DNA of 63,956 bases, the filler included, from Octopus bimaculoides (Eukaryota): NCBI RefSeq assembly GCF_001194135.2. It is 5 parts of 5 records of this genome, joined end to end, with 100 filler letters (N's around TTAATTAATTAA, not from the genome) between each part and the next. Parts side by side here need not be neighbours in the genome. Positions count along the whole stretch, not along the records: positions 53,190 to 61,463 come from NC_068989.1; 4 more parts are not named here. The stretch is one strand, 5' to 3'. Positions 53,190 to 57,156 of the stretch are shown one piece after another; positions within the stretch are counted from its first letter, which is position 1; the number at the start of each line of letters is the position of its first letter. The notes beneath the pieces are model-generated. The model was given only the letters and a program-made list of their open reading frames with translations, was not told the DNA's origin and searched no databases. A program made the translations under genes and the position numbers.

Positions 53190-54122
53190 TCCAGTTTATG
53201 TGGAAGGGAGGAAGGCCACTTGTGAGGCGCTCCGTTTGCTGCCAGGCACCGCTAAAGGGTGGGTTAGGGATGCCCTGGTTAATGATGCGCAGACATGCGT
53301 TGAGGCTAAGGCATCTCTGGCGCCATCTGGAAAGTAATAAGGTGTGGAATTCGCTGACAGAGGAATTCTTTCCGCGACCAGCCTCCTTGGAGAAATTCAA
53401 ACCCGGTTTCATTAAAAGACGTAACCTGACTGTATGGCAAAAGGAGTGTCGACAGCCACTCGTGCTTATCCACAAGAATGGCAAGGCCGGCAGTGGGAAT
53501 ACCACCTCGGTGTTATACAAAGGGCTTGTAGATTGTAAAAACGATGACGTACTAGGAGGGGCTCTGGGGTTCGAAGAGAGAACCAACTTGCCAACCTGTT
53601 TCGAAAAACTTTCAGGCCAGGGTATTTGGATAATTACCAAAAATCCCTGACATGGCAGTGTTACAGTAACGCTTTACCTGTTCGCGAGAAATTATCCAGG
53701 CACGGAATGCCAGTGCCACCGACATGTCCATGATGTGGTCTGGGTGAGGAAACTGTCTAGCACGCTTTTGTATAATGTCGGGAGTTATCAAGCTTGATAA
53801 TTTACGTAGATCACGTGTTGTCGCATCTGGGGAGAGTACAGCTATCAGCTGAGTCTATAATAAAGATTGTACCGCCAACTGGACTCTCAAAGGAAGGTGA
53901 AACATATTTTCTCTGTACAGTTGCAGTGTTGAAAGAGTGTGTACGGAGGACTAGAAAGGATTCTTGACGGGATCCTTCATCTCCGGCCCTGGTTTGCTAC
54001 TTTACTTCAGATATCATCTCAAAAGCATGATAGCACTGGAGAGGAAAATCCTGTCACGAAGTATGTTCGAGAAACGATGGAAGGCTGTGATGAGAAAGAT
54101 GGATGTTAGTAACCCCACTTAA
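53190..54122 (+). pseudogene. L1/Tx1-type LINE ORF2 C-terminal remnant (post-RT region and zf-RVT-like zinc finger)
   Basis: QFMWKGGRPLVRRSVCCQAPLKGGLGMP; after a frameshift WQCYSNALPVREKL...TCP*CGLGEETV*HAFV*C; ends RWKAVMRKMDVSNPT*. Confidence 0.88.
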
Positions 54123-54317
54123 TCAACATTGAAAAAAGAAAGGATAGCCGCAGGTCCTGTCAGGCTGCCGAGTTTATCCCCTCTTTGAAATAAAAAAAAG
54201 GTCAACATATCTTGTGTATGTATGTATATATATATATATATATATATATTATTATTATTATTATTATCAATTTTTAAAATGTAAGGCTCATTCGAACTCA
54301 TAGTAACGTTTTTTTTG

Positions 54318-54490
54318 TTTGTATTGTCTGTTATGTCCCTTCTGTATTCGATACATATCGTAATAAAAAAATCCACCTCTAGCCGAACAATTGTCCCGTG
54401 CAGACGAGGTCTTTTTGCGTCGTGAATTGGAAGAGGGCCGTGGTACCGTATGTTGGATTTGTGAATTGTTGCGTGCTGTGTTGCAGCGGT
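54318..54490 (+). repeat. Direct repeat copy 1 (3' UTR end, AATAAA, degenerate hammerhead)
   Basis: tatcgtaataaa (54356-67) and acctctagccgaacaatt (54375-92) are identical in copy 2; core reads CAGACGA (54401-07). Confidence 0.8.
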
Positions 54491-54556
54491 TTTTGTTTTT
54501 TTTCGTGAAGCTGTCCCTCAACAGCTTGAGGAGAGATAGCTGAGGCTTATCCGGAC

Positions 54557-55684
54557 GTGAGAGAGACAGAGGAGTCATATTCGGAACTGTCGTCTTCTGA
54601 AGAAGAGCTGGTAGAAGCTGGGAAGAAGATGGATAGAGCTATAAAAATGAAAAGTTTCGCGAAACTAACGGAGGTGCCAAAGAAAGAGGTAAGCCTCAAA
54701 AATTTTAGAAACTATGAAAAAATGCTAAAAAAGGAAGGTGGTGACCTGAAATTTTCACCACCACAAGAAATACTAACGGAAATGGAAGAAAATAAAATTG
54801 TATACAAGGTCTATTCTGTCAAGGAGAAAAGATTAGAGAATGAACAGACGGACGAAATTGAAAAGGCGTTGAGGCCAATCTGGCAAAACATAGCGTATTT
54901 TGCCAGAGAATGCCAATACGGCACCTTTGAGGTGTATTTTAAGAACAAGGTAAAAGCAAAGTAAAGCTCAGCAAAATAGATGAAAAGGGAAAGGGTAATC
55001 CTTCTACCCACATACCTTGGAAGAAGAACTTCCAGGGTCAGGGTAGAGGGAATCCCCACTGAAATAGACGTGGCTTGGATGGCGGCGGCTGTACTTCTAG
55101 GAAGCGAGAAAGAGGTCGCCGTACGCCAGGCTACAAAAACAGAAGCCACTAATTGGCACGGTAAAATCTTGTAACTAATAATACAGAGTAAGGTGGAAAA
55201 ATTAGAGTTGCTCGGGGAAACGGTGACAGTTGGAGAAGCAATAATGAAAGTGTGGGTAGAGGGTAGAATCCTTCTTTGCTATAAATGTGGTCGAAAAGGC
55301 CACGTTAGAGCGGACTACCCTCTGAAAAATAAGTCAACCCAGGAAAGAGCAGAGACGGAACTGGAAAGGATAGAAGAAAGAAATGAGGAAGATGGATGGC
55401 AAGATACGGGAAGAAAACAGAGGAAGAGGAAAGAGGACAGCTTAAGTGAACCCCAGCCCGTGCTCACCCCACCCATACCCTCTCAACTCCACCCTCCCCC
55501 TGAAGACACCAAACCCACCCATTCCCCTCCGACACAAAAAATAAAAAAAGAACAGCAGTCACACAAAAAACTGCAAAACGACCTTCCCACTCGTTTTGTT
55601 TGCGCCTTATTAAAAGTTTTAAAAAAGGATGTGGTAGATAAGCTAGTGCAATGGATGGATGTAAAAGTGATAGACACGAAGTGA
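54557..55684 (+). pseudogene. L1/Tx1-type ORF1 (gag-like, zinc knuckle), three in-frame stops
   Basis: Track ORFs 54557, 54980 and 55193 share one frame; CYKCGRKGHVRADY is a CX2CX4HX4C knuckle with the last Cys lost; Pro-rich tail; may continue to about 55860 after a frameshift. Confidence 0.85.
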
Positions 55685-55959
55685 ATGAAAACAGAAAAAA
55701 ATGGTTTTAGGCGCATTGGTGCCAGGACACAGAATGAAAATAGTAAGAGACTGCAAAGAAAGCGTGGAATACAGACAAAGAGTATTCAACATAAATGAAG
55801 TACCGGACGGAATAGATTATAATAAATTACTGGGCCTATACAGCATTAACTTTAATTGAATATGAAAGGACGATAATGAGGCTGCTGAGGTGGGGTAAGT
55901 GACACATCCTTCATATATCATTATCATATATCATTCATATTTTCATAATTTTATGTTAA

Positions 55960-56120
55960 TTGTTATATGTCCCCACATTTCTTGTGTTGTCCCCTCTATG
56001 TATGATATTTTTATCGTAATAAAGAGTTGACCTCTAGCCGAACAATTATACTGCGCTGATGAAGGGAAACAACCTGGAAATCGTGATACGCAGATATTGT
56101 TTTGAGCTGAGTTGGGGTGC
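55960..56120 (+). repeat. Direct repeat copy 2
   Basis: tatcgtaataaa (56012-23) and acctctagccgaacaatt (56030-47), 1655 bp after copy 1. Confidence 0.8.
56041..56101 (+). ncRNA. Type I hammerhead ribozyme (candidate)
   Basis: Stem I ctgcg/cgcag plus aacaat/attgtt, core CTGATGA 56056-62, stem II agg-gaaacaa-cct, GAAA 56077-80, mini stem III tcgtga, AUA site with cut after 56088. Confidence 0.75.
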
Positions 56121-57156
56121 TAGATTCCCTTGTTCGAAAAAATAAGGACACAGATCGTGTCGTATAGCCAGCTGGAGACGATGTTTCCTGGAGCTGAATT
56201 ACAGCAACATTCGTCCTAAACCAGGACTGCCATGTTATGTTGTCAAATAATCTTTACTCTAGAATAATGTTGACTGCCGATTCCTAAAACAAATATGCAG
56301 ACGACATCTGTTGTAGCTGTTGTAAACGATACCTGGAGTCTTGATTATATCAATTACTTACAAGAGTCACAGGCAGACAGACCTCCTAAGAAATTGAACC
56401 CGCACAAATTCTTTTCACAAAATTATGTGTTATTTAAAGTAGAGGAATGTAGTATAAAGATATTAAAATAAATGTATTCACCAATCTCATCTGTCCTCAA
56501 TGATACTGGATACTTACAAAGCAGTGACTTACTACACTTGATAATATCTTCCCTGTAACTTTTATACAACTTCCATTTAACTTAAGCACATTGTGGCAAC
56601 CTCTTCGTGAATATTCGTCATGTAACAGTCAAAATATTCAACTTCTTATCATGTTGGATAATGTAAATCTGAAGAGAAACCAGATGATCATAACTGGATT
56701 GCCTTGATCATAGCTGCATTGCTTTAGACACTGAAAATTACATCTTCCACGTAAATTTATATAAACATTTAATGCAGAAACAAAATCTTATCAGTATTAA
56801 TCGTGTGTACTTAAATTGTTTGTACGTTATAATTTCTATTTGTAAAATATTATTACGTTTGTTTAACATTTGCTTTAGAAATAGTCTGTTCTACTCTGGA
56901 TGCAGTAGCACAGCAGAGTTCAAGTGTACTACTAGTCTCCCATATTGACCTTAACTATTTCTCGATTACACTTCAGAGAAACACAATGCATCTTTCGAGA
57001 TATTTTCATTTCACGTATAAAGCGTTACTTACAAAAGCATGCAATTGATATATCGATGTGTGAGTTACCAGCTGCAATAACCATAATGAAATCACACACC
57101 TTGGCTTTGAGTATTCTTAGGAAATTCTCGTCTGTAACCACGTACACAACACTACA

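What the first reader, a model, noticed from the sequence alone, without database searches (positions are those of the whole stretch)
53190..56140. ORF2 - repeat - ORF1 - repeat: a reversed or segmented LINE with LTR-like ribozyme repeats
Seen: the ORF2 C-terminus is upstream of ORF1. Both ORFs are followed by related 3' UTRs (gaaagga...aggctgcYgag at 54138-72 and 55864-89, then tgtcccYtct...tatcgtaataaa) and the same 18-mer. No ORF2 follows ORF1, and recognisable element sequence stops about 100 bp after the second repeat. LINEs normally truncate at the 5' end, so a 3'-truncated third copy would be odd. Inference, model 1: a bipartite element whose ORF1 and ORF2 RNAs are released as separate units by ribozymes, as in Terminons. 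Model 2: a 1.65-kb ORF1-only, retrozyme-like unit, possibly circularising, that travels with the autonomous LINE. Model 3: an ordinary tandem with an internal deletion.
Basis: partly seen in the sequence, partly recalled or inferred. Interest (0 to 1): 0.8.

Follow-up and report, generated by a model that had tools for sequence, protein, structure and literature searches.

The report
Tandem octopus LINEs, one ORF1-only
Two decayed copies of an octopus L1-like jumping gene lie head to tail, the second being a 'half' element that keeps only the first gene; no ribozyme is detectable, and both the tandem layout and the half element are known kinds of thing.

Summary
An ORF2 C-terminus pseudogene (53190-54122) lies upstream of an ORF1 pseudogene (54536-55684). 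Both are followed by a homologous ~81-nt block with an identical 18-mer. No ORF2 follows ORF1.

The 'reversed/segmented LINE with ribozyme repeats' reading is not supported.
- Relatives fetched from Octopus chromosomes (L012, L013, L017) and a cephalopod read-set contig (L016) have the standard ORF1-then-ORF2 order.
- Two of those loci are head-to-tail tandems. The AATAAA end of one unit abuts the 5'UTR of the next. 'ORF2 - UTR - ORF1' is simply a junction between units.
- Units A and B belong to different families. The closest relative of A carries its own ORF1, only 33% identical to B's.
- Unit B is ORF2-less. Two contigs from another cephalopod data set (L019, L014) show the same ORF1 - short 3'UTR - tail layout and are homologous to each other. 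This points to a propagating ORF1-only (HAL1-like) lineage rather than a one-off deletion.
- No Rfam ribozyme matches. One hammerhead-like motif can be drawn after unit B only. Its CUGAUGA box reads GACGA in both homologues.

Unresolved: whether the block after B is a third-unit 5' stub or a target-site duplication.

The parts
53190..54122 (+). Unit A: C-terminal third of an L1-like ORF2, a pseudogene cut by the piece's left edge
   Evidence: Pfam zf-RVT E=1.3e-9. tblastn to the L012 ORF2, residues 824-1132, in three frames with shifts at 53578 and 53955. In-frame stops at 53731, 53758 and 53773; natural stop TAA at 54120. 80% nt identity to L017 14111-15069.
54123..54371 (+). Unit A 3'UTR, with an internal (TA)n(TTA)n microsatellite (~54205-54268) and the conserved 3' module TGTCCCTTCT...TATCGTAATAAAAAAA (54334-54371)
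   Evidence: The module aligns with the 3' ends of L012, L013, L017, L019 and L002 (A7). In L012 and L017 this AATAAA-type end directly abuts the next unit's 5'UTR. In L013 it is followed by a (TTA)n tail.
54372..54535 (+). Unit B 5'UTR. It begins with block T1: the 18-mer at 54375-54392 plus 17 nt, to ~54409
   Evidence: The 18-mer is exact in both copies. An O. vulgaris relative (L010, 76% nt identity) shares 54465-54924, and homology visible in the alignment reaches back to about 54448. The distal part of T1 resembles the start of unit Y in L019 at a similar offset, weakly (220/3000 shuffles).
54536..55684 (+). Unit B ORF1 pseudogene: N-terminal region, two RRM-like domains and a CCHC knuckle. 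It may continue after a frameshift in frame 55701-55859
   Evidence: 54 homologues in the representatives search; every one of the 17 whose source carries an organism name is Octopus. Alignment A2. tblastn E=1e-44 to 1e-52. ATA in place of ATG at 54536; stops at 54962, 54977 and 55172; knuckle CYKCGRKGHVRADY. The frame-0 peptide vs the L014 ORF1 C-terminus gives BLASTP E=0.016.
55685..56029 (+). Unit B post-ORF1 region and short 3'UTR, with a second copy of the 3' module (55988-56023) and no ORF2
   Evidence: No ORF2 homology by tblastn. Collinear homology to the post-ORF1 region and 3' end of the ORF1-only unit in L019 (5/500 shuffles). The 81-nt block is shared with unit A.
56030..56065 (+). 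Block T2: the same 18-mer plus 17-18 nt, following unit B. Either the 5' stub of a third unit (possibly reaching ~56136, before an A6 run) or the right-hand copy of a target-site duplication
   Evidence: 18/18 identical, then 10 of the next 17 identical; by my reading, five of the seven differences are transitions, three at CpG sites. Similarity beyond 56066 is not significant. An analogous exact 19-mer starts both units of the L017 tandem.
56051..56093 (+). Hammerhead-like motif (CTGCG CTGATGA AGGG-AAACAA-CCTG GAA ATCGTGAT A/CGCAG). Judged not to be a ribozyme
   Evidence: My own post-hoc descriptor expects 0.004-0.0055 hits per piece. No Rfam hammerhead model matches, even on a 75-nt slice at E<=10. 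As drawn, helix II starts with an A.G mismatch and helix III has 2-3 pairs. The homologous positions read CAGACGA in unit B and TCGACGA in L019.

Best explanation
The region is the junction zone of head-to-tail LINE units of an L1-like clade found in Octopus genomes. In this clade ORF2 carries APE endonuclease, RT and zf-RVT domains. ORF1 carries two RRM-like domains and a CCHC knuckle.

Unit A is the 3' end of an autonomous element. Its ORF2 is a pseudogene, and its 3'UTR ends in a conserved module ...TGTCCCYTCT...TATCGTAATAAA(A)n.

Unit B (about 54372-56029, ~1.66 kb) is a complete unit of a different family that lacks ORF2. It has a 5'UTR, an ORF1, a short 3'UTR and the same kind of 3' module.

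'ORF2 before ORF1' is therefore the boundary between two ordinary units, not a reversed or split element.

Inferred, not shown:
- B belongs to an ORF1-only, non-autonomous lineage (HAL1-like). It would be copied in trans by the ORF2 protein of autonomous relatives that recognise the shared 3' module.
- The tandem arose by retrotransposition, not by DNA duplication. The routes are repeated insertion at one site, or the reverse transcriptase jumping from the 5' end of one RNA to the 3' end of another.
- The shared block after each AATAAA is most likely the first ~35 nt of the following unit's 5'UTR, so a short third-unit stub follows B.

No self-cleaving RNA is involved.
For: Shown:
1. Standard order in relatives. 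ORF1 is immediately followed by ORF2 in L012 (three units 99.4-99.5% identical, one ORF2 intact at 1132 aa), L013, L016 and L017.
2. Tandems recur. In L012 (O. vulgaris) and L017 (O. bimaculoides) the AATAAA-type 3' end of one unit directly abuts the next unit's 5'UTR. The array's left edge starts exactly at that 5'UTR start.
3. The L017 units are only ~75% identical to each other. The window's A and B modules are 73% identical. These tandems are therefore not DNA duplications.
4. A and B are different families. A is 80% nt identical to L017 unit 1, whose own ORF1 (P0022) is 33% identical to B's ORF1.
5. The 3' module is conserved across the window's A and B and L012, L013, L017, L019 and L002.
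6. ORF1-only units recur. L019 has ORF1, no ORF2, the 3' module, then the next unit's 5'UTR and ORF1 start. L014 has ORF1, ~90 nt, then ...TTATCGTATTTA(TTA)n. L019 and L014 are homologous through the ORF1 end and 3'UTR (0/1000 shuffles).
7. B's post-ORF1 region is collinearly similar to L019's (5/500) and to the L014 ORF1 C-terminus (E=0.016).
8. No ribozyme is found in the window or at the junction of an intact relative.
9. L012's ORF2 has Exo_endo_phos, RVT_1 and zf-RVT domains. Its best solved relative is human L1 ORF2p, E=2e-71.

Established knowledge: HAL1 is an ORF1-only L1 derivative that arose several times (PMC5753468). Non-LTR tandem dimers are common (PMC5932611).
Against: - Only one locus of the window's own genome could be read, because the source assembly is not in the look-up collection. 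The copy number of B-type units in that genome is unknown.
- The link between B and the L019/L014 ORF1-only family is modest (p~0.01, E=0.016).
- The C-terminal ORF1 domain was not detected against P0057, P0031 or a four-sequence profile.
- L014 and L019 come from read sets (SRR118693xx) whose species I could not identify.
- Trans-mobilisation through the 3' module is inference by analogy with LINE/SINE partnerships.
- The origin of a 35-110-nt 5' stub at the right end of a LINE array is unexplained. A target-site duplication would explain the 18-mer more simply.
Confidence: 0.7

Rival explanations
1. Ordinary tandem with a one-off internal deletion. Unit B was once a full ORF1-ORF2 element and lost ORF2 by a deletion at this locus. 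It is not a member of a propagating ORF1-only family.
For: It is the simplest reading. Both units are decayed pseudogenes. No second copy from the same genome could be examined. Similarity of B's tail to L019 is only p~0.01.
Against: The same ORF1 - short 3'UTR - tail layout occurs twice in another cephalopod data set, and those two copies are clearly homologous. B's 3' module is only 73% identical to A's. B's ORF1 family also differs from A's. B is therefore not a local copy of A's element.
Confidence: 0.2
2. The shared 18-mer block is a target-site duplication from double insertion. Two LINEs entered the same site, leaving the duplicated target in the junction and after unit B (layout T-A-T-B-T). 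On this view there is no third-unit stub.
For: The block is exact over 18 nt in the window, and over 19 nt in L017, with sharp edges amid ~62-73% identical surroundings. These lengths are typical of LINE target-site duplications. The block sequence differs between loci. Double insertion with a target duplicate in the junction is a documented route to TE tandems, including non-LTR elements (PMC5932611).
Against: The 17 nt after the 18-mer still match 10/17 in fixed register (p~0.006 by my own binomial estimate), and most differences are transitions. The corresponding part of B's 5'UTR resembles the start of a related unit in L019. That suggests the block is element sequence. In L017 the 19-mer is followed in both units by homologous 5'UTRs. 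The left outer copy cannot be seen in any locus.
Confidence: 0.28
3. Segmented or retrozyme-like element. Hammerhead-type ribozymes in LTR-like repeats cut ORF1 and ORF2 RNAs apart, or release a 1.65-kb ORF1 RNA that circularises.
For: A type-I hammerhead-like arrangement can be drawn at 56051-56093. A descriptor written to fit it is rare in shuffled sequence (0.004-0.0055 per piece). The repeat spacing is 1655 nt.
Against: No Rfam hammerhead, HDV-like or other ribozyme model matches at E<=10, even on a 75-nt slice. The descriptor was post hoc. As drawn, helix II opens with an A.G mismatch. The other repeat reads CAGACGA with no GAAA, and the L019 homologue reads TCGACGA. The CUGAUGA box therefore looks like a CpG-to-TpG change in one copy. 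The intact tandem junction in L012 has no ribozyme. ORF2 is an APE-type L1-like protein, not a Penelope/GIY-YIG type. A and B are different families.
Confidence: 0.03
4. Assembly artefact: repeat copies joined wrongly by a short-read assembler.
For: The piece contains a 380-N scaffold gap (58181-58560). LINE tandems in L012 and L017 also end in N gaps.
Against: The shared exact sequence is only 18 nt, too short to mislead a k-mer assembler. The flanking module copies differ at 27% of positions. The same architecture is seen in three independent chromosome-scale or read-set assemblies.
Confidence: 0.03

Closest known systems
HAL1 ('half-L1') of mammals
   Same: A non-autonomous derivative of an L1-like LINE that keeps ORF1 and lacks ORF2. 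HAL1 arose repeatedly (PMC5753468).
   Different: Here the host is a cephalopod. ORF1 is of the RRM + CCHC type. The unit sits in a head-to-tail tandem with an autonomous element of another family. Only the ~40-nt 3' module is demonstrably shared with autonomous relatives. Copy number in the source genome is unknown.
Transposable-element tandem dimers formed by double insertion (McGurk & Barbash 2018; R1 arrays in Drosophila)
   Same: Head-to-tail units, with the same short block in the junction and after the last unit. The tandems are made by transposition rather than unequal exchange (PMC5932611).
   Different: The two units here are different families. The left outer copy of the block is not visible. 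The distal part of the block looks element-derived.
Drosophila telomeric HeT-A / TART / TAHRE arrays
   Same: A gag-only element and RT-encoding LINEs arranged head to tail (my own knowledge).
   Different: There is no telomeric context: no TTAGGG repeats in the piece, and ordinary genes lie next to L010 and L011. Nothing points to a 3'-UTR promoter or a host function.
Penelope-like elements, Terminons and retrozymes with hammerhead-bearing pseudo-LTRs
   Same: Superficially, a repeated block flanks a coding unit, and one CUGAUGA box is present.
   Different: ORF2 is APE + RT + zf-RVT, closest to human L1 ORF2p. There is no GIY-YIG domain. No Rfam hammerhead matches. The box is absent from the homologous copies.
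LINE-SINE partnerships of the 'stringent' type (shared 3' tail recognised by the LINE reverse transcriptase)
   Same: A non-autonomous unit carries the conserved 3'-terminal module of autonomous LINEs.
   Different: The dependent unit is Pol II-type, 1.66 kb long, and encodes ORF1.

Membership tests
L1-like LINE (APE-RT-zf ORF2, RRM+CCHC ORF1) | ORF2 with an APE endonuclease, a reverse transcriptase and a C-terminal zinc-binding domain | tested here: met
   The window holds only the C-terminal third: zf-RVT E=1.3e-9, colinear with residues 824-1132 of L012's ORF2. That intact relative has Exo_endo_phos, RVT_1 and zf-RVT and matches human L1 ORF2p at E=2e-71.
L1-like LINE (APE-RT-zf ORF2, RRM+CCHC ORF1) | ORF1 lies upstream of ORF2 within one unit | tested here: met
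   Met in the relatives L012, L013, L016 and L017. It cannot be tested for unit A in the window, because its 5' part lies beyond the piece.
L1-like LINE (APE-RT-zf ORF2, RRM+CCHC ORF1) | Insertion flanked by target-site duplications | tested here: inconclusive
   The 18-mer at 54375 and 56030 could be a TSD of unit B, or the 5' end of successive units. The left flank of unit A is outside the piece.
ORF1-only non-autonomous LINE derivative (HAL1-like) | Encodes ORF1 and has no ORF2 between ORF1 and the 3' end | tested here: met
   No ORF2 homology in 55685-56029 or anywhere downstream. ORF1 is colinear with full-length relatives up to the knuckle (A2).
ORF1-only non-autonomous LINE derivative (HAL1-like) | Shares terminal sequence with autonomous LINEs that could mobilise it | tested here: met
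   The 3' module is shared with unit A (E=2.7e-9) and with L012, L013 and L017. Actual mobilisation was not tested.
ORF1-only non-autonomous LINE derivative (HAL1-like) | Several dispersed copies with the same deletion architecture | tested here: inconclusive
   Two homologous ORF1-only copies exist in another cephalopod data set (L019, L014), with modest similarity to unit B. The source genome itself could not be searched.
Hammerhead ribozyme (type I, as in Penelope-like elements and retrozymes) | CUGANGA...GAAA...UH core with three helices, scoring against the family model | tested here: not met
   No Rfam hammerhead match at E<=10 on 8.3-kb, 500-nt and 75-nt searches. The hand-drawn motif at 56051-56093 has an A.G pair at 10.1/11.1 (my reading; descriptor hit).
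Hammerhead ribozyme (type I, as in Penelope-like elements and retrozymes) | Present in each copy of the repeat | tested here: not met
   The first repeat reads CAGACGA and has no GAAA. The L019 homologue reads TCGACGA.
HDV-like ribozyme at a LINE 5' end | Nested double-pseudoknot fold starting at the element's first base | tested here: inconclusive
   No Rfam HDV-type match in the window or at the L012 junction. No dedicated descriptor search was run. Only ~35 nt are conserved between the two copies, less than such a fold needs.
Penelope-like element / Terminon | Penelope-type RT with a GIY-YIG endonuclease | tested here: not met
   The ORF2 clade is APE + RVT_1 + zf-RVT and L1-like.
Retrozyme | Non-coding unit bounded by hammerhead repeats that yields circular RNA | tested here: not met
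   The unit encodes ORF1 and has no detectable hammerhead. Circular RNA cannot be tested with these tools.
TE tandem dimer by double insertion | Identical target duplicate in the junction and at both outer flanks | tested here: inconclusive
   The junction copy and the right-hand copy are present (18/18). The left outer copy is outside the piece. The L017 analogue has the left and junction copies, but its right end falls in an N gap.
Telomeric LINE array (HeT-A/TART type) | Array located at a chromosome end | tested here: not met
   No telomeric repeat in the piece. L012 and L017 lie at internal coordinates of 40-Mb and 127-Mb chromosome records, and ordinary genes lie next to L010 and L011.

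The most novel reading that the evidence does not exclude
An octopus L1-like clade has split off a gag-only (ORF1-only) partner lineage. That lineage is copied by the ORF2 protein of autonomous relatives. Both kinds are joined into precise 3'-to-5' head-to-tail arrays. The ~35-nt block after each AATAAA would be terminal redundancy: transcripts from an array are cleaved a few tens of bases past the AAUAAA, inside the next unit. That redundancy would guide template switching between RNAs, much as retroviral R regions do. The result would be a HeT-A/TART-like division of labour and an LTR-like replication trick in an ordinary, non-telomeric LINE.
Probability: 0.12. Interest if true: 0.6.

Novelty: new member of a known kind. 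Interest (0 to 1): 0.33.

Why it matters
The result removes a tempting but wrong reading: a reversed or segmented LINE with ribozyme LTRs. It replaces it with two documented phenomena, LINE tandems and ORF1-only derivatives.

The modest points of interest are these:
- Head-to-tail tandems were found in two of the six chromosome loci sampled for this octopus L1-like clade.
- In L017 and in the window, the tandem partners are diverged families.
- An ORF1-only lineage seems to exist in cephalopods. I know of no description of one there, though my literature check was limited.

If confirmed genome-wide, this would bear on how octopus genomes became so repeat-rich. It would also give a natural system for studying trans-mobilisation and tandem formation by an L1-like reverse transcriptase.

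Tried and rejected
- **Rfam ribozyme searches.** Run at E<=10 on the whole piece, on both repeats, on a 75-nt slice and on the junction of an intact relative. No ribozyme was found.
- **Minimum-free-energy folds of the repeats.** Not more stable than shuffles.
- **The 18-mer as part of a widespread conserved gene or target.** Six exact metagenome hits, all in unrelated contexts: three different contexts that each occur once, plus a fourth shared by L004 and L005 and a fifth shared by L006 and L007. 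This is consistent with chance. It is absent, at up to 3 mismatches, from the four Octopus chromosome loci (~93 kb) held at that point.
- **Retrieving the source locus by exact ORF look-up.** Not in the collection.
- **Word-indexed protein search with the whole ORF1.** Found nothing. The HMMER representatives search with a 135-aa piece then found 54 relatives.
- **Viral-contig scan with the ORF2 relative.** Nothing.
- **PDB search with ORF1.** Only retroviral nucleocapsid knuckles at E>0.07.
- **ORF1 C-terminal domain.** I tried to show that it continues in frame 55701-55859. BLASTP and hhalign against P0057, P0031 and a four-sequence profile failed. Only the L014 comparison gave E=0.016.
- **An ORF1 fragment at the start of L016 as a second ORF2-less unit.** It belongs to a different family and there is no DNA support, so I dropped it.
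- **A 5' stub after the single L013 element.** Not significant.
- **Alignment of 5'UTR starts across families.** Uninformative.
- **An 'MRLLRWGK' reading at 55877 as a remnant ORF2 start.** Not testable, and I make no claim for it.

Full report
**What is in the window.** The piece is eukaryotic DNA: it carries microsatellites, a SINE and a 380-N scaffold gap.

The stretch 53190-54122 encodes the last third of a LINE ORF2.
- Pfam zf-RVT matches at E=1.3e-9.
- It is colinear with residues 824-1132 of an intact 1132-aa octopus ORF2 (tblastn E=4e-75).
- It has two frameshifts (53578, 53955) and three in-frame stops inside the zinc finger (53731, 53758, 53773).
- It ends at its natural stop, 54120-54122.

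The stretch 54536-55684 is an ORF1 pseudogene.
- The start codon has decayed to ATA.
- There are stops at 54962, 54977 and 55172.
- The single CCHC knuckle reads CYKCGRKGHVRADY, with the last Cys replaced by Tyr.

Pfam alone gave only a sub-threshold zf-CCHC hit, and a word-indexed search found nothing. An exhaustive HMMER search with the 135-aa N-terminal piece then found 54 relatives. I looked up 22 of them. All 17 whose source carries an organism name are from Octopus vulgaris, O. bimaculoides or O. sinensis. The other five are unnamed Logan or MetaClust entries. The alignment shows an N-terminal region, two RRM-like domains and the knuckle (A2). tblastn back to the window gives E=1e-44 to 1e-52. 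The window is therefore octopus-type DNA and 'ORF1' is a real LINE ORF1.

**The repeat.**
- The 18-mer ACCTCTAGCCGAACAATT is identical at 54375-54392 and 56030-56047.
- TATCGTAATAAA lies at 54356 and 56012. TGTCCCYT lies at 54334 and 55988.
- Only an 81-nt block is strongly significant: 54329-54407 vs 55983-56062, 73% identity, blastn E=2.7e-9. No shuffle out of 500 reaches its score.
- The UTR middles, once the microsatellite-like AT-rich sequence is allowed for, are marginal too (98/2000).
- Sequence beyond ~35 nt after the start of the 18-mer is not significantly similar (233/2000; all).
- These weak matches are at least collinear.

**No ribozyme.**
- Rfam found no hammerhead, HDV-like or other self-cleaving family at E<=10. 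This holds for the whole piece, for 500-nt slices around each repeat and for a 75-nt slice.
- I could draw a type-I hammerhead-like arrangement at 56051-56093. A descriptor written to fit it is rare in shuffles (0.004-0.0055 per piece).
- That descriptor is post hoc. As I drew it, helix II opens with an A.G mismatch and helix III has two or three pairs.
- The first repeat reads CAGACGA with no GAAA. The homologous stretch in another cephalopod reads TCGACGA.
- The CUGAUGA box therefore looks like a single CpG-to-TpG change in one decayed copy.
- The junction of an intact, near-identical tandem in O. vulgaris has no ribozyme match either.

**Relatives show the standard order and frequent tandems.** Look-ups of ORF1 relatives returned chromosome loci and read-set contigs.

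L012 (O. vulgaris OX597840.1):
- It holds three head-to-tail units, 99.4-99.5% identical to one another, with a period of 5279 nt. The third is cut by an N gap.
- Each unit runs: 284-nt 5'UTR, ORF1, a few-nt spacer, a 1132-aa ORF2 (intact in the first unit, one frameshift in the second), 3'UTR.
- The 3'UTR ends ...TTGTCCCCTCT...GGGTAAATAAAATAAAA and directly abuts the next 5'UTR.
- The array's left edge begins exactly at that 5'UTR start.

L013 (O. sinensis) is a single ORF1-ORF2 element. It ends in the same kind of module followed by (TTA)n, and (TTA)n also lies just upstream of it.

L016 (a cephalopod read-set contig) has ORF1 followed by the ORF2 N-terminus.

L017 (O. bimaculoides CM046605.1):
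- It is a second tandem: ORF1-ORF2-ORF1-ORF2.
- Its two units are only ~75% identical in ORF2.
- Both nevertheless start with the same exact 19-mer, TTTTTCAAACAGCTGGTCG. The rest of the two 5'UTRs aligns only loosely (A5).

The AATAAA-type module is thus the true 3' end of these elements (A7). 'ORF2 C-terminus, UTR, then ORF1' is what any junction between two tandem units looks like.

**A and B are not partners.** Unit A's ORF2 end and 3'UTR start are 80% identical at nucleotide level to L017 unit 1. That unit carries its own upstream ORF1 (P0022), which is only 33% identical in protein to the window's ORF1. A and B therefore come from different families, which excludes a bipartite element. 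L012's ORF2 has Exo_endo_phos, RVT_1 and zf-RVT domains, and its best solved relative is human L1 ORF2p (E=2e-71). The clade is L1-like, not Penelope-like.

**Unit B is ORF2-less, and that layout recurs.** Nothing after ORF1 resembles ORF2. Two contigs from another cephalopod read set have the same build.
- L019 has ORF1, then about 200 nt, then the 3' module ending ...TTGTGGCCAATTTCATAAAATAAAG. The 5'UTR and ORF1 start of a further unit follow.
- L014 has ORF1, about 90 nt, then ...TTATCGTATTTA(TTA)n.
- These two are clearly homologous from the ORF1 end through the 3'UTR (0/1000 shuffles). They are therefore copies of one ORF1-only family.
- The window's post-ORF1 region is collinearly similar to L019's (5/500).
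- The peptide in frame 55701-55859 matches the L014 ORF1 C-terminus weakly (E=0.016).
- The same stretch did not match P0057, P0031 or a four-sequence profile.

I therefore favour B being a member of an ORF1-only lineage, analogous to mammalian HAL1 (PMC5753468). This link is of modest strength. I could not count copies in the source genome, because its assembly is not in the look-up collection.

**The block after each AATAAA.** Two readings remain.

(a) It is the first ~35 nt of the next unit's 5'UTR, so a short third-unit stub follows B.
- After the exact 18-mer, 10 of the next 17 bases match in fixed register. Five of the seven differences are transitions, three of them at CpG sites (my reading).
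- The corresponding part of B's 5'UTR resembles the start of unit Y in L019 at a similar offset (220/3000 shuffles).
- In L017 the exact 19-mer is followed in both units by homologous 5'UTRs.

(b) It is a target-site duplication left by two insertions into one site.
- This is a documented route to non-LTR tandems, with the target duplicate in the junction (PMC5932611).
- Exact 18- and 19-mers with sharp edges, differing between loci, fit this reading well.

I put (a) near 0.6 and (b) near 0.28. Neither changes the main conclusion. If (a) is right, the stub's origin is open. It could be a later deletion. It could also be read-through to a poly(A) site just inside the next unit; an A6 run at 56137-56142 may mark such an end. 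The conserved start could be an internal promoter, as in insect LINEs. This is inference only.

**How it most likely works.**
- Shown: the unit structures, the standard order in relatives, recurrent tandems between diverged units, the shared 3' module, and the absence of ribozyme matches.
- Inferred: the ORF2 protein of autonomous relatives recognises the 3' module and copies ORF1-only RNAs in trans. Tandems arise by repeated insertion at one site or by template jumping during reverse transcription. They do not arise by DNA duplication, because partners are only 73-75% identical.

**Verdict.** The headline interpretation (reversed or segmented LINE, ribozyme LTRs, circles) is not supported. 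What remains is a new example of two known things: an ORF1-only LINE derivative and a LINE tandem. A possibly high tandem propensity in an octopus L1-like clade is worth a genome-wide count.

Noticed in passing
window 57855-58180: A SINE-like repeat, cut by the N gap at 58181. It is 87-89% identical to copies in O. bimaculoides (L011, two copies) and O. vulgaris (L010). Its translation also appears inside the O. bimaculoides gene model P0054. ARAGORN finds no tRNA in the part present.
   Followed up: partly
window 61172-61284 and 61351-61463: A large inverted repeat: 113-nt arms, 97% complementary, 66-nt spacer. It runs to the right edge of the piece. It could be a MITE-like element or an assembly palindrome.
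   Followed up: partly
window 58561-58711: Just after the N gap and a (TA)n run lies a ~150-nt repeat. It matches sequences in L010, L012 and L013 at 69-75% identity. This is another dispersed octopus repeat, not identified.
   Followed up: no
L012 4438-19184 (O. vulgaris OX597840.1): A tandem array of at least three units, 99.4-99.5% identical, of an L1-like LINE. One ORF2 is fully open (1132 aa) and another has a single frameshift. This is a young and possibly active element. The 5'UTR carries an internal A30-A35 tract of variable length. The array ends in an assembly gap.
   Followed up: partly
L013 9722-9778 and 15346-15375 (O. sinensis CM016872.1): A single ORF1-ORF2 element of the same clade has (TTA)n on both sides. 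This suggests either a (TAA)n-type tail with insertion into a microsatellite, or target preference for (TTA)n.
   Followed up: partly
Proteins P0054, P0007, P0016 (Octopus gene models): These annotated Octopus proteins fuse LINE ORF1 sequence to other parts: a SINE-derived stretch plus LDL-receptor repeats (P0054), C2H2 zinc fingers (P0007), and a long N-terminal region with no Pfam match (P0016). They are probably annotation chimeras rather than domesticated genes.
   Followed up: no
window 54401-54407, 56056-56062; L019 1568-1573: About 27-33 nt from the presumed unit start, all three homologous 5'UTRs carry (A/C)GACGA or its CpG-decayed form GATGA. This is reminiscent of the downstream promoter element of insect LINE internal promoters. 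The comparison is from memory and was not tested.
   Followed up: no
window 57150-57232, 59262-59300, 60944-60990, 54205-54268: Several microsatellites: (AC)n, (TG)n, (GATA)n and (TA)n(TTA)n. The last one lies inside unit A's 3'UTR. Its counterpart in unit B is a degenerate AT-rich stretch.
   Followed up: no
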